A stretch of DNA of 64,000 bases, taken from Girardia tigrina. Its lineage: Eukaryota. The notes beneath the pieces are model-generated. The model was not told the DNA's origin. It searched no databases and was given only the letters and a program-made list of their open reading frames with translations. Both the position numbers and the translations under genes were made by a program. Where the stretch lies: the NCBI GenBank assembly GCA_001938485.1, contig MQRK01241688.1, forward strand, positions 1 through 64,000. The letters run 5' to 3'. Numbering within the stretch: the first letter of the stretch is position 1; each line of letters opens with the position of its first letter. Of the stretch, positions 17,286 to 63,615 are shown one piece after another.

Positions 17286-18089
17286 ATGATTACCCATGAA
17301 GATTATTCTTTCATCAAATTTATTCAAAAACGTAAAAAGGGTTCCATCTATTTGGCTAACAATAACTCCTCAAATAATAAGAAATACAAAGTTGTTCTTA
17401 TCAAAACCTTCCTCAAAGAAGCAGCTGGTTACTTTATATCTTCAAGCAAATATCCTTTCCCAATTCCAAAGGAAATGTATTATAATACATTAATAGATAA
17501 CAATAAAGTTTGTCCAGTTATTCTTGATTATTTCCAGAATGACGAAGAATTTGCAGTTGTAATGGAATATCTAAGCGGACAATGGACTGAATTGTTTGAT
17601 TATACGGCGAATACGAATCGACTAGAAAGATGTATCAAGAAAATAATGAAAGGTGTATTTGAAGCTCTAGAAATTCTCGTCGAGAAAGGAATATATCATC
17701 TTGATATTAAACCTGCAAACATAATGTTTCATAAAACGAAATATCAAGTAAAAATACTTGACTTTGAAGATTGTACATACAATATAAAATATTCTCGACC
17801 AAGGTGTAACGATATAATTGGTACAGTCGGACATATGGCTCCAGAAGTAATGAGTGGAAATTGGTATGATATAGAAAGAAGTTTAGTATTTATGTTTGGA
17901 AGTCTTATGTTCAGTTGTATTGAGACAAAGATGGCATTCAAAAATGAAGAGGAATATAAAACATTTAGAGGATTGTCATACAAACGATGTTCAGAGTCAG
18001 CAAAGAGTCTGATTGACAAATGTATGGTTTGGAATCCGGACAAAAGAATCAATTTTAGGGAAATTAAACATCATATTTGGTTACAATAA
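17286..18089 (+). CDS. intronless Ser/Thr protein kinase (PIM/CAMK-like), domain only
   Basis: VLIK, VMEY, YHLDIKPAN, LDFE, GTVGHMAPE and PDKRI motifs; TATAAA about 20 nt upstream of the ATG; intact 267-aa ORF. Confidence 0.9.
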   Translation: MITHEDYSFIKFIQKRKKGSIYLANNNSSNNKKYKVVLIKTFLKEAAGYFISSSKYPFPIPKEMYYNTLIDNNKVCPVILDYFQNDEEFAVVMEYLSGQWTELFDYTANTNRLERCIKKIMKGVFEALEILVEKGIYHLDIKPANIMFHKTKYQVKILDFEDCTYNIKYSRPRCNDIIGTVGHMAPEVMSGNWYDIERSLVFMFGSLMFSCIETKMAFKNEEEYKTFRGLSYKRCSESAKSLIDKCMVWNPDKRINFREIKHHIWLQ

Positions 18090-18518: not shown

Positions 18519-19540
18519 TTAAGTAACGATTAATTATTTTATTAAAGTTTAAGATTAATTTATTAATATATTATATTATACAGGGGTGGCCATAAGTCGC
18601 TTTACCTAGTTTTAATAATAATAAACACAAAATTCTAAGTGATACAACTTTTATTTAATCAGCGTACAATAATAATTTCAAAACAAAAACTTGAAAACAA
18701 TTAAATCTTATCTTCAAAGTGTTGTCCTTCAGATTTAATACACAACTGGATTCTTCTCTGAACAGAGTGACAGATTCGTCGGCACAAGTCTTTATCGTTG
18801 TTCAAGGCTGCAAATTCTGTAGTAATTCTTTCCTTCAACTCGGATATGGTTAGAAAATTTTGTGAGTAAACGCGTTCCTTCAGGATACCTCACATTGAAT
18901 AATCACAAGGTGTCAGGTCCGGTGATCGTGGGGGCCATTCAGTGGTTCCTCTTTTGCCGATCCACATCTTAAAAGTGCTATCCAAAAAGTCGCGTACATT
19001 TCTACCATAATGAGGGGGAGCACCGTCTTGCATCCAAACGTCGTTATCTGTGTCAAGCTGAGGTACGGCAAAATCACGCAGAAATTTTATTTATCATTAT
19101 TATTATTTATTATTTTTATTATTATTATTATTATTATAGCTGAGAATTGACCGTTCCATCAAAGAAGTATGGACCCAGCACACCAGTGGAACGTATTCCT
19201 CCTATAGAAAGATTGTTGGTCTCCCATACCAGATGAGGATTCTCAGTGGAATAGTACACGGCATTATGCAAATTAACGTGATCATTCAACTTAAATGAAG
19301 CTTCGTCGGTCCAATTCGGTCCAATTACAGCTCCAATGCTGTAACCATTTGGAAAATTCTATGCGCCTGTCATAATCGTCATCCTTCATTTGATGGAGCA
19401 AACGAGGTCGCCAAACTTTCAACTCAAAGTCCTTCATTATTCTATGTCACTTGTGCGTGGTATATGCAACTGCAAACTTGCACGAACTGCAGATGTTGAT
19501 AGCGCATTCTGATAGAAAGTTCTAACATTTTCTTTATTTT

Positions 19541-20741
19541 TGTAATATATTAATTTTAGTTAATACTTTGTCGCGTGATTGTTTCCTTTGCGGTGTGTCA
19601 ATTCGTTAGATTTTTTTCAGTTTTTTCCAACAATTCTTTTTAATATGAGAAACGTCCTTAAGAACAATAATCAGATGATCTGATTTCTCAGCTGATTCAT
19701 TTATTTTACTAAATTTTTACACTCTTGAAAATTTCAAGAACCCAAACTTGGAGACAAAAATACACAATCCATTGCAAAAAGAGTAATAAATTTGAAAACC
19801 CTAATGTGAACCCAATGTATGATCCAGTCATTGATATAGAAAGCCTGCATTATAGGATTAGATACATAAGATTGAAACCTGTTATTAAGATTTTCCAAAA
19901 ATAAAAATATCAACAAAATCATATCAGCAAAAAATTCGTGTAGGCATTGTTCTTGAAAAGAATAACCGTATTTATTCATTAAAAAAAGTGTAATAATTAA
20001 GAAAAATCACTGAAATAACATATGAAGAAAATAAATCACAAATTATAAAAAAATATTGTGATCGCTCCAAAATTGAAAAAATGATCAATCAAAGTTTTAA
20101 ACGTCAAATCTGCCATACCGTAAATAAATAAAAGTAAAACTAATAAAACGAAATTGGAAAACAAAAATGAATTTAATTAAAAAAAATCAATGATCGCTAA
20201 AAGATCATAATTAAAAAAATCAATAAGTACGTACGACAGAACTTTCAAATCAAAACCCATTTCCGACGAATTTTCGCAATTGTCTATTTATCAACCTTTC
20301 AAATCAAAACCAATTTCCGAAGAATTTTCGCAGTGGACTATTTATCAACCATTCAAAGCAGTTTCGACTAAAATATTGTATATTGTACAAAAGTATATTG
20401 TACAAAAATCAAAACCCATTTCCGACGAATTTTCGCAGTGGACTATTTATCAACCTTTCAAATCAAAACCAATTTCCGACGAATTTTCGCAGTTGATTAT
20501 TTATCAACCATTCAAAGCAGTTTCGACTAAAATATTGTATATTGTACGAAAGTTGTAAGTTGAATTTTTATTTAGTGTATTCTCATAATTATAATTAAAT
20601 CCCAGCCTTAACTTTATTTTTATTTAATTATAGTAAAAAAGATTAACTATAATATTTGGTGTCAGAAGTGGGATTTAATTGTAACGCTAGTTTTAACAAA
20701 TTGTATTTTTTTTAAAAGTAAAAAAATAATTATATATTACA
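19541..20741 (+). mobile_element. LTR remnant (LTR, PBS and LTR end)
   Basis: TGTAATATA...TATATTACA termini; ATTTT TSD; removing it restores the transposase frame DENKENVR; PBS-like TGGTGTCAGAAGTGGGAT at 20657-20674. Confidence 0.8.
20242..20552 (+). repeat. 54-bp tandem repeat in a higher-order (A-A-B)x2 arrangement
   Basis: Four copies of CTTTCAAATCAAAACCCATTTCCGACGAATTTTCGCA...TTTATCAAC and two copies of a CATTCAAAGCAGTTTCGACTAAAATATTGTA unit. Confidence 0.9.
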
Positions 20742-20971
20742 ATTTTCATCGGTATTCATATTGTTAGGGTGCCCACTTCTTTTCTTGTGGGTTACAGAGC
20801 CGGTCTCGTGAAACTTTTTAACCAAAACATGCATTGATTGTCGTGATGGAGGAGCGTTATTAGGATACTCTTTTGAAAATGCTGCAGCTACAGCTCTTGA
20901 ATTTCTATCATGCTTTGTCCACTGCTTTACTATAAAAATTTGTTGCTGAAGTGTTAATTGTCGTACCATGC

Positions 20972-22630
20972 CTGGACGACTGGCAATTTGGTTTCAGACC
21001 AAACAGAAGCTCAGTGCACACGATTGGTATCTTACGAAAGATACAAGAAGAGGCCAGATACCGGAACATAAACGTATTTGCTATTTTTATCGACCTTGAA
21101 AAGGCATTTGACAGCGTACCCAGGAAAGTTCTCTGGGATTGCCTTCAAGGAATTGGAATACAGGATCGGATGCTAAGTATCATCATGAAATTTAATGAAG
21201 GTTTCACGGGAAGCATTGGAAAGGATGAATTCAGTATGGACAAAGGAGTCCGTCAAGGTTGCGTATTGGGTCCTCTACTATTCAACTTTGTCTTTGATCA
21301 TGCAATTAAGACCGCGATCAAAGAAGGACTATCAGGTGGTGTGAAACTAAAATACAATGGGGAAGAGCTGACCGTGAACAGACTTGCTTATGCAGACGAC
21401 CTGTGCTTACTGGACGAAGACTATGGAAATATCGAACGGAATCTCACGTGTCTCAACACTGTGTTCTTGAATATGGGGCTCAAATCAACATTTGGAAAAC
21501 AAAGATCCTGAATCTCAATTACAGCAAGAGACGAGCTGAATGCCGGAATAGAATGTGTGGACGACTTCTGCTACCTGGGATCGATAATTGAAAGTGGAGA
21601 AAGCTCAGGTACGGACATCAAAGCCAGTATTCAGAAAGGAGCAGCGAAATTACGGACGATCAGACCAGTGTTGAAGAACAACAAATTGTCTCTCCGGAAT
21701 AAGAAGAACATAATTAGCAGCTGTGTATTCCAGGTGGTTTACTACAGCTGTGAAAATTGTAGGACAAATGAAGTACACGTGAAAAAGCTAAAAGCATTTC
21801 ACAATCTATGTACTCGGCGAACTCTGGGGATTTCGAAAGCCGAAAGGATCAGGATTGATGAGATATCAATGGGACTGCAAAGCCCAATGGATATCATGGC
21901 GCGGAGAAAAATCGTACACAATTCCAAGGTCGATTTAGGAGAATGCTTGGAGAACGTCAAGCAGATCAGTGAATGCGAACTCATCGGAGGAAAGAAGATC
22001 AGCGGTCGGAGAAAGCAACATCTGGTAGAATGTCTCAGAGTGGATGCTCACTGGCTCTTTGGAGCCGAGTATAGTTTCGGTGAATTTAAAAGAGATGTTC
22101 TGCAGGAAAACTTACTGAAGATGGATGGAAAGATCGAGAAAGTATTCCGACTGAAGAGAATCCAAAGAAGCGGGGACAAACAAACACTAAGACTGGTGCT
22201 ACCTCGTCTGAAAGAACACAGCTGCCCGATGGATTTTGTTACAAACAATATGCGGAAGTGAAGGAGTTAAACAGGCACCTCAGAAGAGATCACGAAGGAG
22301 CAGAGCCAATACCGCTGAAGAAGAGAGAGAAGAAAGCCCAGTCACGTCAGAAGAAAGGAAAATATCAATGTCAACACTGTCCGAGGGAATACAAGGCCGC
22401 TGGTTTCCTAAGGATTTATATTCAGAAGAATCATCAAGAAACGCAAACATCCAACGCCCAAAGAGAAGAAAACTTGGAAGAAGAGAACAAGGAAGAGCCG
22501 ACATCAAACCAATCCAATCCTCAGTTGCTGAACGCAACTGAAGCCTATCGGGGAGCCCTTAAATACTTTAGTTTGGGTGGACCCTCTAAAGAGCCTTAGG
22601 CTCAATACCATTACAGAGATGGGAGGCCCC
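20972..22630 (+). mobile_element. 5'-truncated RTE-clade LINE with C-terminal C2H2 zinc fingers (copy 1)
   Basis: QFGFR, FIDLEKAFDSV, GVRQGCVLGPLLF, YADD and FCYLGS; ZnFs ...KELNRHLRRDH and CQHCPREYK...H; candidate TSD CCATGC at 20966-71 and 22631-36. Confidence 0.9.
22543..22630 (+). ncRNA. conserved 3'-terminal structured RNA motif of the RTE-ZnF element (copy 1)
   Basis: Stems GCCT/AGGC, CTTTAG/CTAAAG, GGG/CCC, GAGCC/GGCTC and CCAT/ATGG; near-identical to 55823-55914. Confidence 0.75.
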
Positions 22631-23144
22631 CCATGCAAATATTGCCAACAACAATGAACAAAATGAAATAATTTTAAAAATTTTTAAATAAATAATTATT
22701 AAAACAAACAATTTTATCTGGTTTTGTTTATAAATCATTTAGAATTTTGTGTTTATTATTATTAAAACTGGGTAAAGCGACTTACGGCCACCCCTGTATT
22801 TATGATTATATTGTTTTAATAAGTACTTAATTTACATTTCGATAGGTCGAGATTTAAATAATTGTAAAATTTAAAATAGATTAAAAAAGAAATATTTAAT
22901 ATTTAAATTGATTAAATATTTTGTAATTTGTAAATTATAATGAAGTTGAAATAATTAAAATTTCAAAATAAAATAATATATTTGTTAAAATATAAAAGGT
23001 ATTAAGATATAAAAAAATAAATAAATAAAAGAATAAATAAATGTATGAATAAAAATTTCTGAAAATTGTAATAAGTAATTTTGTAAATTTTAGAATCAAT
23101 AAATAAAGATTATGTAAATTTAAAATGTTTAGAAATAGCATTAA

Positions 23145-32968: not shown

Positions 32969-33870
32969 AGATGTTTAGTAAATGAATATTGAATTGTTTG
33001 AATAATACAATTTTAATACAATTTTAATAAATATAATTTACTTTAAAAGGTAATAAAAAATTTTAAGGTAAAAAATTTTAAGTATTGAAATAAGCTTACT
33101 TTGCCCATTCTGAATGTTAATTGATGGGTTGTAGTGTCTTATTAGTAGAGATTCACAAAACTGTCGTTCGTAATGTGAATCAAAAGCCTTTTGTAGAACA
33201 GAAAACTCATCTTTTTAAATGGATAAGGTTCTATCCTTACAACATAACCAATGATCAAGAACCTTACTCGATCGACTAATTTGCGAGTGCTCACTAATCC
33301 GGGTTTTGAGATGACGATTTGTCTCTCCGATGTAAGAGTTTTGACACCCGTGACAATTAAACTTATATACCAGATTAGCTTGCAAATCACAAACTGTTTT
33401 CGATTTGTTTGAGAGGAAACTTTGAACTTTGGATGTGACAGAGACTACTTTAGCNNNNNNNNNNNNNNNNNNNNNNNNNNNNNNNNNNNNNNNNNNNNNN
33501 NNNNNNNNNNNNNNNNNNNNNNNNNNNNNNNNNNNNNNNNNNNNNNNNNNNNNNNNNTTTAACTCGTGCATCTGTACATAATTTGTCTAATGTTACCCTA
33601 ATGTTGTGTTCCATTTGCTTGTTTGTATACATATTGTCCCTCAAGCGCCTTCTAAGAATATTTAAACCCTGATTTGCAATTTCAAAACTGAACGACAAAT
33701 TCCAAACTCTGTGAACAAGCCTTTTTATCATACCCTCTCTGTATTTTTTCTCACAAAAATTCTGTGGTGTTGTGTAAAGACCTGTATCTGTTGCCTCTCT
33801 GAATAATTCAGTTTTATGGCCTCCATTCATCCTAGTGACAAGAATATCCAGAAATGGAAGTTTATTACCT
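32922..33870 (-). mobile_element. Penelope-like element 3' part
   Basis: RT thumb LPFLDILV...TDTGLY; GIY-YIG NLVYKFNCHGCQNSYIGETNRHLKTRISEH; downstream hammerhead. Confidence 0.9.
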
Positions 33871-43076: not shown

Positions 43077-43712
43077 GTGCATTGGAGAGCATTTTCCAAA
43101 CACTTGCTGTGGAAAAACAAATGTTTATATTTAGTTTTGCCTGTTCCCTACTCTGAGGGTTTCAGGAAATTCAAAAACTCTATTTTGAAACATGATGAAA
43201 ATAATTTATTAAATTTAAAAATTGTATCTAGATCATGTAAGATAGGAAGTTTGTTTAGTAGTAAATCTATCACTCCAACTGGGTTATGTTCCAATTTAGT
43301 TTATCAATATAAATGTAATGGGTGTGACGCCATATACGTCGGAGAGACTTGTCGTCATCTCTGTAAACGGATTCAGGAACATAATCGCAGGGAAAGTGAT
43401 AGCAATATTGCTCAACATAAGAAGAACTGTTTGAATAATAAAGTTGATGTAAGTAATTTTAAGATTTTGTGTTCACAATTTAATAATTACTGGGAGAGGG
43501 TGATGTATTGAGAGGGTGAAGCATTGTTGATCAAATCTTTTGATCCTAAAATCAATGTCCAAACACCATCCTATTCAACTTTATTGAAAGTATTTTCATG
43601 ATTTAAATGACATAATGATTACATAAACATTGCTTTGATATATAAACGCGAGTATATCATTGTTAATTCAGTCTGATGATGACGGTCGATCCGTCGAAAT
43701 TAATAACAATAA
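43077..43712 (+). mobile_element. Penelope-like element 3' fragment (GIY-YIG endonuclease and pLTR)
   Basis: NLVYQYKCNGCDAIYVGETCRHLCKRIQEH...EALLIKSFDPKIN; hammerhead downstream. Confidence 0.9.
43657..43712 (+). ncRNA. minimal type I hammerhead ribozyme
   Basis: CTGATGA-T-GACGG-TCGAT-CCGTC-GAAA-TTAA-TA; perfect 5-bp stem II; palindromic stem III. Confidence 0.85.
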
Positions 43713-46047: not shown

Positions 46048-47650
46048 AGCCTCCTCCGACTGTTAAGAATAACTGCGTATTACAAATAATTCTCAGCATT
46101 GGCGTACAGGGTAGTGAATCTTAGACTCTGTATCGGGTAGAAACCATTTGACAAATACAAAGTTTTCTGATCCTCTCACACGGCTTCAGATGCAAGAGTG
46201 CGAGCTTTAAATGCACGGGCACGCTTCGGCTTCCCTCTGAGAAATGACCAGTCACGTTCCTTTGTTCCGTGATTCTGGAGACTTCTGGTTGTATAAACGC
46301 ACTTAGTGCAACGGAGAAATGGGTAAGGAAACTGTGTTAATGAAACTATTTGGATGTTCGTAGTACCATTACCTTGGATTCAATGATCAATTAATAAATG
46401 CCTTTGTATCAATCCATTAGCTTTATAAGTTTTGTGGCAGTTCTCCATAGGACATATGAATAAACCACCACATCTCTGCGCCGTCGGCACCGTGGCCAGA
46501 TGCACATTCTTAACGTGTCTTGTGAGTTCCTTCTGCTCAGAAATTTTTTAAAGCAAGAAAAGAATGTACAAGCTAATATTTTGATGCACGGCTGAAGCAT
46601 TTTCGGATATTTTTTCTCGTGCTCGATTGCCTCTTTCAGTCGCTCAGAAATGGTTCCTTTGATCAGGTGTTTAAATTCCTCATCGTTGTCGAGAAGCCCT
46701 CTTTCGTTTAGACTTTCCCTGTATTCTACCAAATCTGCAGGATCGTTGAATATCCAGAGCACATTGCGAGCAATGCCATCTGTCATCAGTTGCCTTTTTC
46801 AACTGCTGATTCTGTGATTTTCTGAGGCGATCTCAGAGTTTATAACTCTTCAAACCTCAGTTACACCCTTCCGTGCATTGTATTCATAGAATAGTATGAG
46901 TCTTTTGGCTAGAATCACTCTTGCCCCATTCAGTCCAATCGTCATGTCCTTATTCAGGATCCTGTCGAATTTGATCTTTTTGAGAGCTGTCCTCGTGCAG
47001 CAATTATGGAAGACTTGTAACCGTGCAACATCCTTCTCAGGCGTTGTCCAGCACTCACTACCATAATAGACCACAGGGAAAATACTAGTCTCAATCAGTT
47101 TTTTCTTCAATACTATTGGGATGCGGTTACTCTGAATTGCACGTTGTAATTCTTTAAGCTACCGCATTCCATTTCGTATTCATTGACTAATATCCCGGTT
47201 GCAGCTAACACTAGTGGTCAATATACTTCCAAAATAACAGAATTATTTCACCCATTCTATGGCCTTCTCCCCACATTTGACTTGTGATATTCCAAAGCCT
47301 GATTCATCAGTAAGGCACATGAATTTCGTCTTAGTAGCACTCATTGTCAGTCCAAATTCCAGAAATGTGCTCCTTAATATATCCAAGTTTTTACAGACTC
47401 GATCAATATCTGAGTCGATGATACAGAGGTTATCTACATATGCAAGTCTGTTCACTTGAAATTCAGTGCCTTGCTCATCGATCAGGGAGACACCTCCTCC
47501 GAATCCTTTCATAATAGCCGTTTTGATCACTTCATCGAAGACCAAGTTGAATAAACTAGGTCCAATTACACATCCCTACCTAACACCTCTTTCTATGGGA
47601 AAATTACTGTTTCCTACAGTGGCGATAAATTTATCATGAAATTCATTGAT
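46048..47650 (-). mobile_element. 5'-truncated RTE-clade LINE with ZnF-type C-terminus (copy 3, most divergent)
   Basis: GVR*GCVIGPSLF, VNRLAYVDNL, FCYFGS and PVVYYGSECW; C-terminal HGTKERDWSFLRGKPK matches HGTTIHDCLFAIGKPK of copy 2. Confidence 0.88.
46049..46184 (-). ncRNA. divergent homolog of the RTE-ZnF 3' RNA motif
   Basis: TTGTAT/ATACAG and GAGTC-TAA-GATTC-ACTACC align without gaps to CTTTAG/CTAAAG and GAGCC-TTA-GGCTC-AATACC, with compensatory changes; closes with GCC...GGAGGC. Confidence 0.65.
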
Positions 47651-47670
47651 AAAACAGAGAAACGAATATC

Positions 47671-48669: not shown

Positions 48670-49680
48670 ATGAGTCCGTCCTTCACAACAGCCAATGGAA
48701 CAACAATAAAAACCTTCTGAACTAAAAACATAGACCTCACCATTAATGAACAAACTTACAACTGGACTTTCGTCATAGCAGACATTACAAATCCGATATT
48801 AGGAGCAGATTTTTAAGTCACTACAACATCTTAGTGGACTGTAAAAACAAAAAATTATACGATCAAAACTTCAAAACATCAACAAATTTAATTAAAATTC
48901 AAAGCAATGTAATCGGAACAATTTTCACGTACAGAAACCTGAAAATAAACTTTTCAAACGGCAACCGTGTAATAAAAAATAAAAACAAAAATACATAAAA
49001 TAAATTATACATAAAACCAAAATACATAATCAGTGCACAATTTGAATCAGAACTGTTTAAAACACTGTGTAAGAAATACAATATAAGCAAACAACGAACA
49101 ACACCGTACAATCCCCAATCCAATGGCATGATAGAAAGATTTCACAGAACATTAAAAGAAACAATCAGAACAAAAGGAGACGACAGAAACTGGCTCAATA
49201 ACCTTTATGAGACACTATTGGCACTCAGAATAAGACCGGATGAAAAAAAACAAGAAATCACCACTAGAAAAACTAACAGGCATAACAAACAAACCTACAA
49301 TTATAGAAAAAACAAAAACGCACAACATAGCAACAACCTAACATACGACTATAATAAAATACAAGCCTTCGTAAAGAAACCACACACAAAAAACTTTCAA
49401 AGCAAGTACACCGGACCTTATAAAATATACATAATTAAAAATAACACAGCTCTAATTGAAATTAACGGAAATAAAACAAGAATTAACTTAAGAAGAATAA
49501 AATTAACACCAACCACAGATTAAAACACTTCGCTTCGCTTTTAGGGGGAGAGCTTATGTAGTGCCCTACTTATTTTTGTATATTTTATTTTGGATTTTAT
49601 TTTTTTTGGGCGTGTGTTATTAATCTTTTTGTATTCGATGTCGCTTATGTTGTAAATTATTTTTATATGGTAATAAAAAA
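48670..49680 (+). mobile_element. internally deleted Gypsy element (protease, integrase, PPT, start of 3' LTR)
   Basis: TANGT...ADITNPILGADF; QFESELF...TTPYNPQSNGMIERFHRTLK; GPY motif; PPT AGGGGGAGAG followed by TGTAGT; right boundary approximate. Confidence 0.85.
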
Positions 49681-53398: not shown

Positions 53399-54538
53399 CA
53401 TATATAACAAAATATAACAAAATACAGGAAGAAGCAAGATACAAAAATATCCACATTTTTGTAATCTTTATAGATCTGGAGAAAGCAATCGACAGCGTCC
53501 CCCGGGAGTCTCTCTGGAGCTGTTTAAAGAAACTAGTGATAAGGGGAGAATGCTTGAAGTTATCAAAGCCTTTTATGAGGAATTTAAAGGTTCAATAGTG
53601 GATAAAACCTTCAATATGAACAAAGGAGTTAGACAAGGTTGTGTTTTAGGTCCACTCCTATTTAAAATCGTCTTCGAGGCAGTCCTGAAACGAGCGATAT
53701 TGAATGGTCTCTAAGGAGGAGCAAAGACAACTACTGAAGATGGAAGCTGCCTCAAGATCAACAGACTGGCTTACACGGACGATCTTTGTCTGATAGACAC
53801 CGACTGGAACAATCTTATCAGAATCCTTATTCTACTGAAGGACTCATTTGTAGATTTAGGACTAAAGATCAATATCAATAAGACCAAAGTTAAGAACCTA
53901 AACAGAGATACCAAAGTTCTCACCGCCGGACACCAGCTTGAGACTGGTTTTGAATGTGTATCCAAATTCGTCCATTTGGGTTCCACAATCTCCTCAAATG
54001 GCACCCCTGAAGATGATATAAGAGAAATAATTCAAAATGGTACCAGGAAGATCAGGGACCTCAAACCGATTCTGAGGAGCTCCAAACTCTCTTTACAGAA
54101 CAAGAAGAAGATTTTCAGCTCTTGCATACTTCCCGTAGTATATTACAGTTGTGAGAGTTGGCGAACAGGTAACAAAACAATCAAGATGCTGGCTGCCTTT
54201 CATAATTTGTGTACTCTCACAATCATGAAAGTGCAGAAGACTGAGAGGATACAGATGGAGACTATCGACATTGGACTCCCGCTCCCCATGGATATCATTG
54301 CAAGTAGAAGACTTGCCTATCATAGCAGGTTGGACACCTCTGATACACCAAACATTATGAGGTGTGTGTGGAGAGCAACAATGCCAATGGGAAAGAAGAT
54401 CAGTGAGAAAAAGAAGCAAGCTCTCTCCGAATGCCTCAGAGTGGATATACAGTGGCTCTATGGGGATAGTGAAAAGTATGAAGACTTCATACACCACATT
54501 GTCCACAAAGACCCCACAATAGAAAGAGGGCAATATAT

Positions 54539-55181
54539 TGTTGGGTTTTAAATTATTAAAATTATCTTTAATTCAATTATTCACTTTTAAAATACAATTC
54601 TTAAATCTTTAATCGTAAATCTCTTTTCTTAATTCTTTAATCAATAATTCTCAATCNNNNNNNNNNNNNNNNNNNNNNNNNNNNNNNNNNNNNNNNNNNN
54701 NNNNNNNNNNNNNNNNNNNNNNNNNNNNNNNNNNNNNNNNNNNNNNNNNNNNNNNNNNNNNNNNNNNNNNNNNNNNNNNNNNNNNNNNNNNNNNNNNNNN
54801 NNNNNNNNNNNNNNNNNNNNNNNNNNNNNNNNNNNNNNNNNNNNNNNNNNNNNNNNNNNNNNNNNNNNNNNNNNNNNNNNNNNNNNNNNNNNNNNNNNNN
54901 NNNNNNNNNNNNNNNNNNNNNNNNNNNNNNNNNNNNNNNNNNNNNNNNNNNNNNNNNNNNNNNNNNNNNNNNNNNNNNNNNNNNNNNNNNNNNNNNNNNN
55001 NNNNNNNNNNNNNNNNNNNNNNNNNNNNNNNNNNNNNNNNNNNNNNNNNNNNNNNNNNNNNNNNNTAGACTAAATATTATTTTATTTGAAGTTAATAATT
55101 TTATTAAAAGAATTATTTAAAAATTTTCCTTTATAAAATTTTATCAAAAGTGTTCACATGTATTTTTTTGGAACCCTAACA
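54539..55181. mobile_element. solo LTR inserted in RTE copy 2 (spans a gap)
   Basis: TGTTGGGTT...AACCCTAACA termini; ATAT TSD; removing it restores the frame RGQYINSLIREG. Confidence 0.8.
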
Positions 55182-55822
55182 ATATCAACTCCTTAATAAG
55201 AGAAGGGAAGCAGAACAGAACAAGAGCCGATCTGCCGAAATTACTCAATGAGAGAGATAAACTCATTCAATGTACGATAGAAGATTGCTTTAATGAGTTT
55301 GCCGAACAAAAGGAGCTAAATAGACATCTCAAGCGGGATCACACGGAATCCACAGTAAGCATCCAGCTTCAGCTCCCAGAAGATGAAAAACCGTTTAAAT
55401 GTACCAAATGCAGCAAAGGTTACAAAACGAAAGAATGGTTCACTAGGCATCTGCGTAAAGATCATCGAATAGAATCTAGGGAGAATATCAATGAACATCC
55501 GACAGAATCATCAGTGCAATCCTACAGAAGAAGCGACAATCCAGACAGAGACGAAGAACCCACACTTATCCAAACGACCAATTTTCAGTCAGCAACAGTC
55601 ACCCCGACTATTTCAACGGTGGTGGAGCAAACGACTTATCCGAAAGATACACATTTGTCTTTTATGATCGCAGATCCAAATGAGAGGGGAAAGTTCAAAT
55701 GCCCCAAGTCCACCAATACAGCCAAAGGGATGCTCAATCATGGTACCACAATTCATGATTGCTTGTTTGCAATAGGAAAGCCCAAGAAATTTCGGAGACT
55801 GAAGCACTCCGTCCCCGTAGGA

Positions 55823-55914
55823 GGCCTATCGGGGAGCAGCTAGCACTCTTTAGTTTGGGTGGACCCTCTAAAGAGCCTCGTGGCTCAATACCATTCGAAA
55901 GAGATGGGAGGCCC
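55823..55914 (+). ncRNA. conserved 3'-terminal structured RNA motif of the RTE-ZnF element (copy 2)
   Basis: 31-nt block CTTTAGTTTGGGTGGACCCTCTAAAGAGCCT identical to copy 1; differences confined to predicted loops and linkers. Confidence 0.75.
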
Positions 55915-55966
55915 ACATCGGAGAGACAAATCGAAATTTTCGAAAAAATAAATAAATATAATAATA

Positions 55967-57504: not shown

Positions 57505-57816
57505 ATAATTATGTTAATCGGCGACGGAAACACCGATTGTTTATTTCACTGTGCCGAAAGCATTCTCCAGTGCAAAATCAGCGGTTTTTCGTCCTTCAAA
57601 GATCTTTCACTATTCTATCGAATGCTCAATGAACAATCGAGCGACAATTGCGACATTGAGAGATTATTGGAGCGATTATCCGGTGAATTTTCTGTGTGAT
57701 TTGACCGACTGATTATCGATTTTTTTGTGATTATTGCAGAAATATTCAAATCAAATATCGAAAAAGCGATTGAAATAATTGACAAAGAAAATTTGAGTGA
57801 TTTTGAAATATCAAAG
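57505..57816 (+). CDS. two internal host exons (57505-57682, 57740-57816), resembling the C-terminal end of a Rab-GAP TBC domain
   Basis: TTAG acceptor; 57-nt GTGAAT..TGCAG intron; in-frame LFHCAESILQ...RMLNEQS...DIERLLERLSEIFKS; GTATTT donor. Confidence 0.6.
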
Positions 57817-57819
57817 GTA

Positions 57820-60185
57820 TTTTTTTATTATTTTTTTTCAGTATTTTATTTATTGATTTTTTTTAATTTTTATCGAATAAAAAACATTTTTAAAATTTTG
57901 AATTTTTTATCGCGTTTATTTTTTAAATATTATTATATGACTTTTTAGCATCCGATTCGTTTTTTAATTTAATTTTTACTTTTTAATATATTTTTAAATT
58001 ATCATTTTTTAATAATTATTTTCTTTCGGTTTGATTTAATAATTATTTCGTTAAACTTTGAGAAAACAAATATTTCATTTTTTTCTAAATGTTTTCAGAA
58101 AAAAAGCATTTTTGAAAATTAAAAAAATTGATTTTTTCTAAAATTTTTTTCGAATCGATTTATTTATTAGATTTTTTTACTTCCGATTCGTTTTTTAATA
58201 TTTTTAATTTAATTTTTCGATTTTTTAAACTTTTTAATATTCATTTTTTAATTATTTAGTTTTTTTGGCTGGATTTATTTTATGATTTATAACCGTATTT
58301 TCTTAAAATTTTAATTTGTCTTTTTATAATTTTTTATTTAATTTTTAACGTTTTTACTTTGATTTTTTACTTTTGAAATTTTATTCTTTTAATTTCATAT
58401 TATTTTTTTCAAAATATCAGTTTATTTTTTAAATTTTTTAATTGAATTTTTTTGTTAAAAAATTTTACAGATTTTTAATTATTTACTGTTTTTAATCATT
58501 TAGTTTTTTTCGACTGGATTTATTTAAGGTTTTATAATCGAGATTTTCTTAAAATTTTAGTTTTTTCTTTTTATAATTTTTAAAATTAGTTTTTAACATT
58601 TTTACTTTTTATTTTTGAATTTTCTAAATTTTTTTTATTTATTTTTTTTTCAAAATACCAAGTTATTTTTTTAAAATATTTTAAATGATTTTTTTGTTTT
58701 CTCTTTTTGTAAAATTTTCTGAATTTTTGATTATTATCATTTTAGAATTTTTGAATCGATTTATTTATTAATTGTTTTTTTTATATTTTTTATTATTTTT
58801 TCAGTATTTTATTTATTAATTTTTTTATTTTTTTTCGAATAAAAAACATTTTTAAAAGTTTGAATTTTTTATCGCGTTTATTTTTTAAATGTTATTATAT
58901 GACTTTTAGCATCCGATTCGTTTTTAATTTAATTTTTACTTTTTAATATATTTTTAAATTATCATTTTTTAATAATTATTTTCTTTCGATTTGATTTAAT
59001 AATTATTAAGTTAAAATTTGAGAAAACAAATATTTGATTTTTTCTAATTATTTTTAGAAAAAAGCATTTTTGAAAATTAAAAAAAATGATTTTTTTCTAA
59101 AATTTTCTAATTATTATAACTTTTTTTGAATCGATTGATTTATTAGATTTTTTACATCCGATTCGTTTTTTAATATTTTTAATTTAATTTTTCGATTTTT
59201 TAAATTTTTTTTAATATTCATTTTTTTAATTATTTAGATTTTTTGGTTGGATTTATTCTATGAATTATAACCGTATTTTTCTTAAAATTTTAATTTGTCT
59301 TTTTATAATTTTTTATTTATTTTTTAACGTTTTTACTTTTGAAATTTTATTTTTTTAATTTCATATTATTTTTTTCAAAATTTTTTAATTGAATTTTTTT
59401 GTTTACAGATTTTTAATTATTTAATGTTTTATTATTTATTGTTTTTTAATCATTTAGTTTTTTTCGACTGGATTTATTTAATATTCTATATTCGAGATTT
59501 TCATAAAATTTTAGTTTTATCTTTTTATAATTTTTAAAATTGGTTTTTAACGTTTTTACTTTTTATTTTTGAATTTTCTAAATTTAATTTTTTTTCAAAA
59601 TAACAAGTTATTTTTTTAAAATATTTTAAATGATTTTTTTGTTTTCTCTTGTTATAAAGTTTTCTGAATTTTTGATTATTATCACTTTAGAATTTTTTGA
59701 ATCGATTTATTTAATAATTGTTTTTTATATTTTTTTATTATTTTTTCAGTATTTTATTTATTGATTTTTTTTTATTTTTATCGAATAAAAAACATTTTTA
59801 ATAGTTTGAATTTTTTATCGCGTTTATTTTTTAAATGTTATTATGTGACTTTTAGCATCCGATTCGTTTTTAATTTTTACTTTTTAATATATTTTTAAAT
59901 TATCATTTTTTAATAATTATTTTCTTTCGGTTTGATTTAATAATTATTTTGTTAAAATTTGAGAAAACAAATATTGATTTTTTTCTAATTATTTTTAGAA
60001 AAAGCATTTTTGAAAATTAAAAAAAATTAAATTTTTTCTAAAATTTTCTAATTATTATAATTTTTTTCGAATCGATTTATTTATTAGATTTTTTTACATC
60101 CGATTCGTTTTTTAATATTTTTAATTTAATTTTTCGATTTTTTAAACTTATTTTTAATATTCATTTTTTTAATAATTTAGTTTTT
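57820..60185 (+). repeat. T-rich tandem satellite, ~950-960 bp unit, ~2.5 copies
   Basis: Landmarks such as TATCGCGTTTATT and TTAGCATCCGATTCG recur at ~57910, ~58870 and ~59817. Confidence 0.9.
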
Positions 60186-60189
60186 TATG

Positions 60190-61090
60190 ACGTTAATGAT
60201 GACTATAAAGAACAGTTCCAAACATGAATAAATTTTCTGAGTAGTCTTGACATGAAAATGGAATATCGAAAAGGTGAAAAACATTCAAACGCTGATGCAA
60301 TGTCAAGAAATTCGTGCGAACTATGCAATCAGTGTCAAACAATGCATGAAGAGGCCAAGAAAGGAAAGATTAAAACAAGAATACTGGCATTAAGTGAAGA
60401 ATCAGATGGTTTTAAATGGCAGAAGAATAATAACGAAATAAAACAAATAATCGAGGACATAAGTAAAGGTAGAACAAGAAAATGGTCATTAAAGAAGGAT
60501 ATCGTCATAAATCAAGATAATAAATACTGGATCCCAAAGGCAGAACGAGCAAATTTTATTGAAGAATGCACAAATTGTTGTGTCATGCAGGTTGTAAAAA
60601 GGTCTATAACTACCTCCGAGATGATTTCGACATGGAAAATATGAGAGAATTTATAAAAGAAATCGTTCAAAGTTGCATAAATTGTCAGAAAAGGAAGACA
60701 CTAACAACCAAAACGAAAGAAAAGCATATAAAGCAATTAGCGGATGAACCTTTCCAGAAAATATACATTGATTTTTGTGGACCATTCAAAAGAAATATAA
60801 ATGGATGTCAATATATATTTGCAATAATTGACCAGTTTAGCCTGAATGCAGCAGCTAGTCAAGATGAAAAAACAGTTAGAAAATTGTTATTGGACAGATG
60901 GATATGAAAATTCGGACCAGCAAAAGAAATCCACGTAGACATAGGAAAAACATTTGAATCGGTTTTGTTCAAGGACATGGCGACAAAATTTCAAGTTGAG
61001 GTATTTTATTCGAGTCCATATCATCATGACACAAATGGAATCGTGGAAAGATAGTTTCGCACGATCAGAGATGCTTTGAATAATTTCTAT
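60190..61090 (+). mobile_element. Gypsy pol fragment (RNase H end and integrase)
   Basis: EYRKGEKHSNADAMSR, HKLLCHAG, CINC, PFQKIYIDFCGPF and SPYHHDTNGIVER; same family as 44160-45760. Confidence 0.88.
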
Positions 61091-62395
61091 CCAATAAGTT
61101 TTTAGTAAAGATTTTATTTAAATATTTATTTCGCAATTTGTTAAAAAATAATAAGAATTAATTCATTAATCAATTTAGTTTAGAATGCACTCGTACGAAA
61201 GCTTTGACAAAGATTGTCTGAAGTACAATCAAAATTGTTGTTTAAATAAAAATATGAAAAGTCAAATTGGTGTTCTTAATAATCTTCATTGAAGTTGTTA
61301 AAATGTATCTTTGGTTTCGGTTTATTTATAATTTTTACTCTGCTATTTTTTTAATAATTTAATAAAATATTTAAAATAATAAAAAACTATGCTTTTATTT
61401 TTAAAAGAGAAAATTGATTTTCACTCAAAGAAAAATATTTAAAAATTATCAAATATTAAGCGAAAAAAATAATTGAAAAATAAAAAGAATATCCAGAATT
61501 AAATTAATAAATAATTTATTGAACATTTGGTTTTTTTCGGTTAGATTTACTTAATATTTCTTTAAAATTTTTTATTCATCGTAAAATTTTAAAAATATTT
61601 TTCTAATTATTTAAAAAAAATTTTTTAAAAGGTAGAATTTTGAATTTTTCCATGGATTTTCTAATTAAAATTTAAATTTTTTCCAGCTGAATTTATTTAA
61701 TATGTATTTTTTTAATTTGTGTTTTACTAACTGCAACTGAAGCAACATTGATGAATATTTAAAATTGTTTGAATGTCTGAATGTATTGAAGTTGTATGTT
61801 GATTTGCGTATGGTGGTCACCCATATGGAAAATGGTATTATATTTAATTATGACTATTCGAACATAATTAAATTAATAATTTGATAAGTTTATATTTTAA
61901 AAATTAAGTTTAATATTTTTTAAGAAAAGAAAATCTTTTAATTAAATTTAAATTAAATTCATTTTTAAATTATTATTATTTTGAATTTTTATAAAGTAAT
62001 GGTTAAAATTATTATTTTTAATCAATATTTTTAGAAATTAAATATTTTAAAAAGATTTAGAAAAATTGTTCGAATATTCATGATTAATAATGGAAATAAA
62101 AAAACCAATTAGAACGATCTCTATTTTACCAATTTTACCATATTTTTTTATTATCGCGTTTATTTTTAAATTTATTTATTTCTCTATTTACAATTTTTCA
62201 ATTTAATTTTAATCTTATTACTTTTTTCGCCATATATTAAATTTTAATTTTAAATTAATTTAAAGTTTTTCTGAAAAAACTTGAATGATTTCAAAATATG
62301 AAGAGTAAAATTTGACGGAAATGTTTTTAAATGATTTTTTGTTTTTTATTTCTATGTAATTTATTTTTTTGTCTCAGATAATTATTTTTAGAAAA

Positions 62396-63615
62396 AACTA
62401 GTAAATCAAAAAAATAATTTTTTATATCCATTCTTTATGCAGACAAAACTCTACTTTGCCCAGAAAGTTTTTAAAATTATAAAAAATTTAGTTAAAAAAA
62501 CACAATAAAAATTAATTTAAACTACTTTTAATTTAGAAGTAGTTATCTTGCAATTAATATTGTTCGAGAACTGCGAATTTTCCGTTTTGTCCCATTTTAA
62601 GACCTTAAAAAGTTTTCTTCGATCAAAAAAAAAACATAATCATTTATTGTCATTGAGAAGAGAAAAAAATTGAAGAAAATCGATTGAGTAAAAAGCCTTC
62701 AAAAACAGGTTTCTAAATNNNNNNNNNNNNNNNNNNNNNNNNNNNNNNNNNNNNNNNNNNNNNNNNNNATATATATATATAAAGTAATCTAATAAAAAGA
62801 ACGGAGACTAGTAAATCACAAAATTAAAATTTTTATATCCATTCTTTATGTATACCAAACTCTTTGTTGGCAAAGTAAAATTTTTAAAAATTATACGTGA
62901 AATTATATGGTCACCTTTCTGGCAGTAACTCACATGGACATTTATGTTGGTTTTCTTAGCATAATCATTTAAGTGGTATTCGTTCAAAAGATTGTTTTGG
63001 AATCAGGTAGTTGTGAGATAATCAGTTAAATATTTATTTTATGTCACTATTCTGATTGCCTTAGTTAGTTATAAACATAGTTATTAGATTTAAATGAGTT
63101 TTATTGGTCTTCTACCTTTTAAGTCTTTTGTCTTTTGGGATGGTACCAAAAAGTGTTGTAGCAAAAACTGGTTTTGGTAAACATTTCAACGAAGGTCAAA
63201 CAACAACAAAATATTAAAAACTAGTAAATCAAAAATTAAATTTTTTATATCCGTACTTTATGCGGACAGAACTCTACTTTGCCAACAAAGTTTTTAACAT
63301 TTAAAAAAAATTAATTTTAAAATCACATTAAAAATTAATATAAACTATTTATAATTTATAAGTAGATATCTTGCAATTAATATTGTGCGAGAACTCCCAA
63401 TTTTCCGTTTTTTTCCCATTTTGGTATTTTAAAAAGTTTTTTTCGATCAAATTTTTACATAATCATTTATTGTCATAGAGAATGAGTAAGTGTGCAAAGT
63501 TTGAAGAAAATTGATTGAGTAGAAGGCCTTCAAAAATAGGTTTTTAAATTCCATGGATGCATAAATATATGTATGTATATATCTATATAGAAAGTAAGTG
63601 AATAAAAAGAATGGA
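62396..63615 (+). repeat. degenerate ~410-bp tandem repeat, three starts, middle unit partly replaced
   Basis: ACTAGTAAATCA...TTTTATATCC recurs at ~62397, ~62807 and ~63220; units 1 and 3 align over ~320 bp. Confidence 0.75.

What the first reader, a model, noticed from the sequence alone, without database searches (positions are those of the whole stretch)
22543..22630. Conserved, covarying structured RNA at the extreme 3' end of three divergent zinc-finger RTE retrotransposons
Seen: copies 1 (22543-22630) and 2 (55823-55914) have clearly diverged RT proteins and unalignable C-terminal linkers. They still share GCCTATCGGGGAG-[var]-CTTTAGTTTGGGTGGACCCTCTAAAGAGCC-[loop]-GGCTCAATACCATT-[loop]-GAGATGGGAGGCCC, with differences only in predicted loops and linkers. 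Conservation is not protein-driven: copy 2's ZnF ORF stops inside the motif (55843) in a different frame from copy 1. The predicted fold is a multi-way junction closed by GCCT/AGGC, with stems CTTTAG/CTAAAG (capped by GGG-TGGA-CCC), GAGCC/GGCTC and CCAT/ATGG, and a conserved AATA linker. Established: LINE ribozymes (HDV-like, twister) are usually 5', and stringent LINEs carry simple 3' stem-loops. Inference: this is an undescribed RNA module, either a 3'-end-defining ribozyme or processing signal or an aptamer-like RT/zinc-finger loading site.
Basis: partly seen in the sequence, partly recalled or inferred. Interest (0 to 1): 0.9.

Follow-up and report, generated by a model that had tools for sequence, protein, structure and literature searches.

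The report
Conserved 3'-end RNA of site-specific LINE
A real, strongly conserved RNA module of about 90 bases forms the last bases of a small family of zinc-finger, RTE-like jumping genes. It is most likely the handle by which the element's own reverse transcriptase picks its RNA and starts copying, which is a known kind of signal in a new family, not a demonstrated ribozyme.

Summary
The shared motif is real. Window 22542-22629 and 55823-55914 are the only DNA-level similarity between two 5'-truncated LINE remnants, and nine further full or partial copies turned up in ENA metagenome contigs.

Across five subfamilies the module is 83-95% identical, against 49-67% in the adjacent coding DNA. 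Flanks diverge right after its last base, so it is the true 3' terminus, with no poly(A).

Three claims fail:
- The third copy (46048-46186, minus strand) carries a different module.
- The "different frame" argument rests on decay of copy 1; intact relatives all stop in one frame, at module bases 19-21.

About 70 bases are still non-coding. No Rfam family matches.

A closing stem and a 3' hairpin are robust. The middle is ambiguous; a long arm pairing the two "variable" segments fits better, but support is weak.

Context found here: the family inserts at one site of a GIY-YIG-coding repeat (11-bp duplication) and has a sub-threshold HDV-like ribozyme hit exactly at its 5' end. That resembles R2.

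Best reading: a 3'-terminal site for protein recognition and the start of target-primed reverse transcription. It is a new member of a known kind.

The parts
22542..22629 (+). Type-A 3'-terminal RNA module, copy 1. This copy is decayed: two bases of the V1 segment that pair in intact relatives are changed.
   Evidence: Sequence. cmsearch with model R1 gives 85.6 bits. Alignments A4 and A6.
55823..55914 (+). Type-A 3'-terminal RNA module, copy 2.
   Evidence: Sequence. cmsearch with model R1 gives 109.7 bits. It is 98% identical to the module of L001.
46048..46186 (-). Type-B 3'-terminal module of the third LINE copy. It is about 140 nt, has a different sequence, and is also predicted to be closed by a terminal stem.
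   Evidence: Sequence. Alignment A3 with L002 and L006. RNAalifold result. Not detected by model R1.
20957..22629 (+). LINE copy 1: a 5'-truncated remnant with part of the RT, two zinc fingers and the module. The ORF is broken by 1 frameshift and 1 in-frame stop, and the third zinc finger is missing. The start coordinate is approximate.
   Evidence: RVT_1 hit at E 8e-20. tblastn outer bounds.
53419..55914 (+). LINE copy 2: a 5'-truncated remnant with part of the RT, the zinc fingers and the module. The ORF is broken by 2 frameshifts and 1 in-frame stop. The start coordinate is approximate.
   Evidence: tblastn outer bounds. 87% amino-acid identity to P0294.
46048..47662 (-). LINE copy 3: a 5'-truncated remnant of the type-B sister lineage. 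The ORF is broken by 1 frameshift and 6 in-frame stops. The upper bound is approximate.
   Evidence: tblastn outer bounds. 76% amino-acid identity to P0004.
55915..55933 (+). 19-nt remnant of the family's preferred target, the GIY-YIG-coding site, directly after copy 2.
   Evidence: The same 19 nt follow the module in L001, L003, L008 and L009. They also occur uninterrupted at window 33315-33333, minus strand.
33215..33465 (-). Uninterrupted copy of the target: a GIY-YIG endonuclease-like ORF of a repeated element, probably Penelope-like. The 11 bases that are duplicated on insertion are 33323-33333.
   Evidence: Sequence and translation. Pfam GIY-YIG at E 0.0076, below the curated cut-off. 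5' and 3' flanks of L003.
43077..43511 (+). Second, diverged GIY-YIG-like ORF of the same kind of repeat.
   Evidence: tblastx match to 33218-33421. Pfam GIY-YIG at 22.3 bits against a cut-off of 22.6.

Best explanation
The module is the 3'-terminal cis-acting RNA of a small family of site-specific, RTE-like LINEs. Each element has a single ORF of about 1188 aa encoding an AP-endonuclease, a reverse transcriptase and three C-terminal C2H2 zinc fingers.

Proposed mechanism:
1. The ORF ends inside the module, at positions 19-21.
2. The RNA then folds into a compact junction. A closing stem pairs the bases at the ORF end with the very last bases of the element. A short 3' hairpin and a larger middle domain complete the fold.
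3. The element's own protein recognises this fold and its invariant unpaired bases. These are the 6-nt joiner after the closing stem, the 4-nt joiner before the 3' hairpin, and the apical tetraloop.
4. After the endonuclease nicks the target, reverse transcription starts at the last base of the closing stem. This gives a precise, tail-less 3' junction.

SHOWN: position, boundaries, degree and pattern of conservation, retention in all 5'-truncated copies, precise junctions, the target-site duplication, and co-variation of module type with protein lineage.
INFERRED: protein binding, cis-preference and the initiation point.
For: 1. Terminal position with precise junctions and no poly(A) in nine copies.
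2. Conservation. The module is 83-95% identical between five subfamilies, while the neighbouring 300 nt of coding sequence are 49-67% identical. Of 95 alignment columns, 66 are invariant, including all 10 joiner columns. Variation is confined to three segments.
3. Each subfamily keeps its own variant of the variable segments (A4, A6). The identity therefore comes from constraint, not from one recent transfer.
4. The most divergent protein lineage (33-35% identity in the C-terminal domain, A5) carries a different module, type B. Type B has the same layout: a closing stem joining the ORF end to the last bases, plus two arms. This is as expected if protein and RNA co-evolve.
5. All three window copies are 5'-truncated but keep the 3' module, the signature of copying that starts at the 3' end.
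6. The closing stem and 3' hairpin have high pairing probability in nearly all copies.
7. The context resembles R2. Insertion is at one site of a multicopy target, with an 11-bp duplication. HDV-like ribozyme hits begin exactly at the 5' junction.
8. Established knowledge: stringent LINE proteins recognise their own 3' tail RNA (PMC4176376), and R2 protein binds its 3' UTR RNA to template TPRT (PMC11194090).
Against: - No binding or initiation data exist.
- Covariation is weak. The better-fitting long-arm fold has only 2 pairs with double changes, and 18 of 500 shuffles reach its covariation score, which the tool warns is not a probability.
- The cognate V1/L2 duplex test gives 4 of 120 permutations as good, with only five subfamilies.
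- Single-sequence folding is no more stable than shuffles (z = -0.9 and -1.3).
- All relatives come from a handful of related metagenome samples, so the phylogenetic depth is shallow.
- No non-autonomous partner sharing the tail was found in the window.
Confidence: 0.62

Rival explanations
1. The module is a self-cleaving or otherwise 3'-end-defining processing RNA. It would trim read-through transcripts to the exact element end, because the element has no poly(A) signal or tail.
For: - The element sits in sense orientation inside another transcribed repeat, so its RNA probably arises from longer transcripts.
- The 3' boundary is exact.
- Unpaired bases are invariant, as in ribozyme cores.
Against: - No match to any Rfam ribozyme family, even at E<=10, on either window copy or on 11 related loci.
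- In R2-type systems the exact 3' end is set by where the RT starts, not by RNA cleavage (PMC11194090).
- The only ribozyme-like signal in the family is at the 5' end.
- A cleavage site at the very 3' edge of a closing stem matches no known class tested.
Confidence: 0.08
2. The module mainly stabilises or regulates the RNA. It could act as a terminal clamp protecting a tail-less RNA from 3' exonucleases. It could also be a structure around the stop codon that tunes termination. Recognition by the RT would then be secondary.
For: - The last bases are sequestered in a stem with pairing probability 0.72-1.0.
- The stop codon lies inside the module, in a segment that pairs in the long-arm fold.
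- There is no poly(A).
Against: - Protection needs only a stable terminal helix. It does not need 66 invariant columns out of 95, including the joiners and the tetraloop.
- Type B reaches a similar layout with an unrelated sequence in the lineage whose protein differs most. That points to a lineage-specific partner rather than a generic clamp.
Confidence: 0.12
3. The near-identity reflects recent recombination, template switching or gene conversion of a 3' cassette among subfamilies, or a DNA-level role. It would not reflect selection on an RNA fold.
For: - Identity rises abruptly at the module's 5' edge (A1).
- LINE RTs are known to switch templates.
Against: - Five subfamilies each carry their own fixed versions of the three variable segments, shared by independent copies of that subfamily: L004/L007, L008/L009/copy 1, L001/copy 2/L011, and L003/L012/L013.
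- Several proposed pairs are G-U and would be mismatches on the other strand.
- The minus strand folds less well.
Confidence: 0.08

Closest known systems
R2 retrotransposon 3' UTR RNA (bound by R2 protein; template for target-primed reverse transcription; PMC11194090). R2 also has a 5' HDV-like ribozyme (PMC3774820).
   Same: - Multi-helix RNA at the extreme 3' end of a single-ORF, site-specific, tail-less LINE that sits in sense orientation inside a multicopy transcribed target.
- Precise 3' junction.
- A candidate HDV-like ribozyme exactly at the 5' junction.
- Zinc fingers in the protein.
   Different: - The endonuclease here is the N-terminal AP type, not R2's C-terminal restriction-like type.
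- The zinc fingers are C-terminal.
- The module is about 90 nt and overlaps the ORF end, whereas R2 has a longer separate UTR.
- The target is a GIY-YIG-coding repeat rather than 28S rDNA.
- There is no sequence or Rfam similarity.
3' tail stem-loops of stringent-type LINEs (eel UnaL2, zebrafish ZfL2; PMC4176376)
   Same: A conserved 3'-terminal RNA recognised by the element's own protein. Conservation exceeds that of the coding sequence. Module type tracks protein lineage.
   Different: Those are single short stem-loops followed by short repeats. Here the RNA is a closed junction with at least two arms, there is no terminal repeat, and the element is RTE-like rather than of the L2 clade.
RTE/Bov-B 3' ends and the SINE tails derived from them (PMC5786205, PMC6007223)
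   Same: Same broad group of LINEs: a single ORF with APE and RT, about 3-4 kb, no poly(A). In that group the 3' end is what the RT recognises.
   Different: No SINE partner with this tail was seen. Insertion is site-specific. C-terminal C2H2 fingers are present.
Target-specific APE-type LINEs of the Tx1 and R1 clades, some of which target transposons (PMC4640811)
   Same: An AP-endonuclease LINE that inserts at one sequence of a multicopy target, here another mobile element. Tandem insertions occur at the same site.
   Different: PMC4640811 lists early-branched, Tx1 and R1 groups as holding most target-specific families. This family's nearest relatives are RTE-like, so it appears to lie outside those groups. 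Clade placement was not tested by phylogeny.

Membership tests
Any Rfam 15 family (including HDV-like, hammerhead, twister, pistol, hatchet, tRNA and 5S) | Covariance-model score at or above the family's gathering score on the module | tested here: not met
   There are 0 hits at gathering score on the whole window. Nothing overlaps the module meaningfully at E<=10. The module has no hits in 11 related loci at E<=1. ARAGORN finds no tRNA-like gene.
3'-terminal recognition RNA of stringent LINEs | Lies at the extreme 3' end of the element with a precise junction | tested here: met
   The flanks of nine copies diverge right after the terminal GGAGGCCC.
3'-terminal recognition RNA of stringent LINEs | Conserved among diverged lineages beyond what coding explains | tested here: met
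   The module is 83-95% identical, against 49-67% in the adjacent coding sequence. About 70 nt lie after the stop codon.
3'-terminal recognition RNA of stringent LINEs | Base-paired structure supported by compensatory change | tested here: inconclusive
The long-arm fold has 2 pairs with double changes, and 18 of 500 shuffles reach its score. In the cognate duplex test, 4 of 120 permutations are as good.
3'-terminal recognition RNA of stringent LINEs | Bound by the cognate protein and needed for copying | not testable with these tools
   This is an inference from position and analogy only.
3'-terminal recognition RNA of stringent LINEs | Tail shared with a non-autonomous partner (SINE) | tested here: not met
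   Model R1 finds only the LINE copies in the window and loci. One 64-kb window is a small sample.
R2-type organisation | Insertion at one sequence of a multicopy target, with a target-site duplication | tested here: met
   The same 3' flank occurs in L001, L003, L008, L009 and window copy 2. The same 5' flank occurs in L003, L013, L014 and L002. L003 shows an 11-bp duplication.
R2-type organisation | HDV-like self-cleaving ribozyme at the 5' junction | tested here: inconclusive
   RF00094 scores 30.8-33.3 bits (gathering score 50) and RF02682 scores 25.5-27 bits (gathering score 44). The matches cover the full model and start at the first base of the element in L003, L013 and L014. All are from one subfamily only; L007 lacks this part.
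R2-type organisation | Restriction-like endonuclease C-terminal to the RT | tested here: not met
   The N-terminal part hits Exo_endo_phos and Exo_endo_phos_2. The C-terminal part is three C2H2-like fingers.
RTE-group LINE | Single ORF with N-terminal AP-endonuclease and RT, about 3-4 kb, no poly(A) | tested here: met
   An ORF of 1188 aa is on record. The full-length copy in L003 is about 3.8 kb between its duplications.
RTE-group LINE | RT groups with the RTE clade in a phylogeny | not tested
   There is only indirect evidence. The next-best relatives carry RVT_1 + Exo_endo_phos + DUF6451, and one window ORF has a weak DUF6451 hit.

The most novel reading that the evidence does not exclude
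The module could be a two-state RNA. Its invariant GGCUC strand can pair in two ways. One partner is a distal G(A/G)GC just upstream of the embedded stop codon, giving a long arm that buries the stop codon. The other is the adjacent GAGCC, giving a local hairpin. Both partners are conserved, and predicted ensembles split between the two states in different subfamilies. A terminating ribosome would open the long arm. Refolding could then hand the 3' end to the newly made protein in cis. This would couple translation termination to template loading, or, less likely, to a new kind of 3' self-processing.
Probability: 0.1. Interest if true: 0.8.

Novelty: new member of a known kind. Interest (0 to 1): 0.5.

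Why it matters
How tail-less LINEs choose their own RNA and fix the first copied base is understood in detail for only a few elements (R2, some L2-clade LINEs). This family offers a compact case.

- It has a 90-nt module with sharply defined invariant and variable parts.
- It has a sister lineage with a different module and a correspondingly different protein.
- It has an exact, recognisable target site.

That makes RNA-protein co-evolution and target choice in an AP-endonuclease LINE directly comparable, by sequence and structure, with the restriction-like-endonuclease R2 system.

The side observation may interest transposon specialists more than the RNA itself. An RTE-like LINE with C-terminal zinc fingers appears to home to one codon block of the GIY-YIG domain of another retroelement, with a probable 5' ribozyme.

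Tried and rejected
SEARCHES THAT FOUND NOTHING
- Rfam at gathering and E-value thresholds on the window, on both module regions and on 11 loci: nothing for the module.
- ARAGORN: no tRNA-like gene.
- Exact-pattern scans for the conserved core in viral, JGI metagenome and GTDB genome contigs: 0 hits each.
- Protein-pattern scans of JGI metagenome and GTDB contigs with the C-terminal domain alignment: no true relatives.
- A second protein search seeded with the copy-1-type protein returned only two proteins.
- A literature search for a LINE targeting Penelope-like GIY-YIG sequences, or for zinc-finger RTEs, found nothing specific.

STRUCTURE
- Single-sequence fold stability is not distinguishable from shuffles.
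- A third fold, pairing the G-run with the CCCU after the tetraloop, is the minimum-energy state in the copy-1-type sequences. Its stems do not vary, so it could not be tested.
- Type B is not detectably similar to type A in sequence.

TARGET IDENTITY
- Confirming the target repeat as a Penelope-like element failed beyond the GIY-YIG domain. No RT ORF could be recognised next to either window copy. 'Penelope-like' therefore stays an inference (PMC8557442).

HOST
- The host organism was not identified.

2. One search printed tblastx segment bounds with frames for the broken copies, which indirectly brackets frame changes. I used only outer bounds and counts afterwards.

Full report
1. WHAT IS IN THE WINDOW

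The window is AT-rich (about 30% G+C) and full of decayed mobile elements. The quoted motif is present at both named places. A self-comparison shows that 22540-22629 vs 55821-55914 (85% over 94 nt) is the only nucleotide-level similarity between two LINE remnants. Their RT regions are 42-60% identical as protein. The island has sharp edges (A1).

All three LINE copies in the window are 5'-truncated. They begin around residues 563-634 of a 1188-aa intact relative. All three are broken:
- Copy 1: one frameshift, one in-frame stop, and no third zinc finger.
- Copy 2: two frameshifts and one stop.
- Copy 3: one frameshift and six stops.

The third copy (minus strand) ends in a different module of about 140 nt (46048-46186), so the title's 'three' is wrong.

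2. RELATIVES

A search of 1.8 billion representative proteins found only ten relatives below E = 1e-10. Further searches defined a small family, present only in ENA metagenome assemblies. Fetching their contigs gave:
- Nine more type-A modules, full or partial: L001, L003, L004, L007, L008, L009, L010, L012, L013, plus the truncated L005 and L011.
- Two more type-B modules: L002 and L006.

The proteins carry weak AP-endonuclease hits, RVT_1 and three C-terminal C2H2-like fingers. The next-nearest proteins are ordinary RVT_1 + Exo_endo_phos + DUF6451 LINE proteins. 'Zinc-finger RTE-like' is therefore a fair label, although clade membership was not tested by phylogeny.

3. THE MODULE IS TERMINAL, NON-CODING FOR MOST OF ITS LENGTH, AND UNDER STRONG CONSTRAINT

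In nine copies the flanks diverge immediately after the final GGAGGCCC. There is no poly(A) or repeat tail.

In intact relatives of all type-A subfamilies the ORF ends in one frame at module positions 19-21 (protein ..VGGLSG..). About 70 nt nevertheless lie beyond the stop.

Between five subfamilies the module is 83-95% identical, while the preceding 300 nt are 49-67% identical. Among 9 distinct sequences, 66 of 95 columns are invariant. Variation is concentrated in three segments:
- V1, which contains the stop codon.
- The loop of the 3' hairpin.

Each subfamily has its own fixed versions of these segments. That argues against a single recent cassette transfer.

4. STRUCTURE

Single-sequence stability is unremarkable (z = -0.9 and -1.3).

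It uses only invariant stems, so it has 0 compensatory pairs and nothing can be said for or against it from variation.

RNAalifold proposes something different: a three-way junction. In it, G(A/G)GC plus V1 pairs with L2 plus GGCUC. This forms one long arm around the CUUUAG hairpin. The results for this long-arm fold are:
- It has two pairs with changes on both sides, one of them with three pair types.
- 18 of 500 shuffles reach its covariation score, which the tool itself warns is not a probability.
- Cognate V1/L2 segments pair better than non-cognate ones, with only 4 of 120 permutations as good, but just five subfamilies are available.

In the predicted ensembles the closing stem (0.72-1.0) and the 3' hairpin are robust. 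The 3' hairpin has pairing probability 0.7-1.0, except in one decayed copy. The middle domain splits between the long arm and a local hairpin, depending on subfamily.

Verdict on structure: a closed junction with a robust terminal stem and 3' hairpin is likely. The middle is unresolved. 'Covarying' is not established.

Type B is likewise predicted to be closed by a stem that joins the ORF end to the last bases, with two arms and a little covariation from three sequences.

5. NOT A KNOWN RNA

No Rfam family matches the module at any threshold tried, and there is no tRNA-like gene.

6. CONTEXT THAT BEARS ON FUNCTION

(a) Site-specific insertion. In L001, L003, L008 and L009 the module is followed by the same sequence. 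The first 19 nt of it also follow window copy 2 (55915-55933). The uninterrupted sequence exists in the window at 33279-33400 (minus strand). It encodes the core of a GIY-YIG endonuclease-like domain. Pfam hits are weak: E 0.0076 there, and 22.3 bits against a cut-off of 22.6 in a second copy at 43077-43511.

L003 carries the upstream half of that site at its 5' flank, with an 11-bp duplication. L013, L014 and the type-B L002 have 5' junctions in the same site. In L012 the element sits directly behind the 3' end of yet another element at the same site.

GIY-YIG endonucleases are the hallmark of EN+ Penelope-like elements (PMC8557442). I could not find the matching RT in the window, so that identity is an inference. 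Not all copies are in this site; copy 1, L004, L007 and L010 have other flanks.

(b) A 5' ribozyme candidate. The first 80 nt or so of the L003-type element give full-length but sub-threshold matches to HDV-like ribozyme models. Scores are 30.8-33.3 bits against a gathering score of 50. The matches start exactly at the element's first base in three loci.

(c) A shared terminal box. All three module types end in GGAGGC(C/U).

Together this resembles R2: sense insertion in a multicopy transcribed target, a 5' ribozyme, and a structured 3' end (PMC3774820, PMC11194090). The difference is that this element has an AP-type endonuclease. PMC4640811 notes that most target-specific LINE families belong to the early-branched, Tx1 and R1 groups.

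7. INTERPRETATION

The best-supported reading is that the module is the 3'-terminal recognition and initiation site for the element's own protein. This is the established role of 3' tails in stringent LINEs (PMC4176376) and of the R2 3' UTR.
- Shown: position, boundaries, constraint pattern, retention in truncated copies, precise junctions, and a change of module type with protein lineage.
- Inferred: binding, cis-preference and the initiation point.

The rivals are less well supported and are laid out in their sections: a processing RNA or ribozyme, a protective or termination structure, and cassette exchange.

8. NOVELTY AND SCORE

The RNA family is undescribed, but its kind is known. I rate it a new member of a known kind, with interest 0.5. 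Part of that interest comes from the site-specific, R2-like organisation found around it.

9. LIMITS AND SLIPS

- All relatives come from a few related samples.
- The protein-search and contig look-up caps are exhausted.
- The host is unidentified.
- The N run at 33466-33557 was left as it is.

Noticed in passing
window 55915-55933 (+); window 33279-33400 (-); L001, L003, L008, L009 3' flanks; L002, L003, L013, L014 5' flanks: The LINE family inserts, in sense orientation, at one site inside the GIY-YIG-like coding block of another repeat (probably Penelope-like). L003 shows an 11-bp target duplication. The empty site in the window is 33323-33333 (-).
   Followed up: yes
L003:82-165, L013:52-135, L014:92-175: There are full-length but sub-threshold matches to HDV-like ribozyme models (31-33 bits, gathering score 50). 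They begin exactly at the first base of the element, as in R2 and some other LINEs. They were seen in one subfamily only.
   Followed up: partly
L012:1-234: The 3' end of yet another element lies here: a third, G+C-rich module type that ends in the same GGAGGCC box. It is followed by the same target bases and then a full-length type-A element. This is a tandem insertion at one site.
   Followed up: partly
window 22542-22629, 55823-55914 and relatives (A6): GGAGGCC occurs as a direct repeat at both edges of the type-A module. The 5' copy overlaps the last codons. The invariant 6-nt joiner plus following bases resemble the duplicated target bases (8 of 9), and chance is not excluded (about 0.2 such matches expected).
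   Followed up: no
window 18581-18643 and 22734-22797: A pair of inverted repeats of about 63 bp (86% identical) brackets copy 1 and the DNA upstream of it. Copy 1 appears to be nested near one end of a terminal-inverted-repeat element.
   Followed up: partly
window 20242-20553: A tandem repeat with 54-bp and 159-bp periods lies just upstream of copy 1.
   Followed up: no
window 17286-18089 (+): An uninterrupted 267-aa ORF has a clear protein kinase domain (Pkinase, E 2e-31). It is the only obvious host-like gene near the finding.
   Followed up: no
window 57800-60200 and 62390-63550: There are very AT-rich (13-24% G+C) tandem or satellite-like repeats. One has a period of about 965 bp at 89% identity.
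   Followed up: no
window 49050-49250 (+): The chance 14-mer match at 49192 lies in a stretch that reads like the integrase region of an LTR-type retroelement. This was judged by eye only.
   Followed up: no
window 33466-33557: A run of N lies inside the GIY-YIG-bearing repeat.
   Followed up: no
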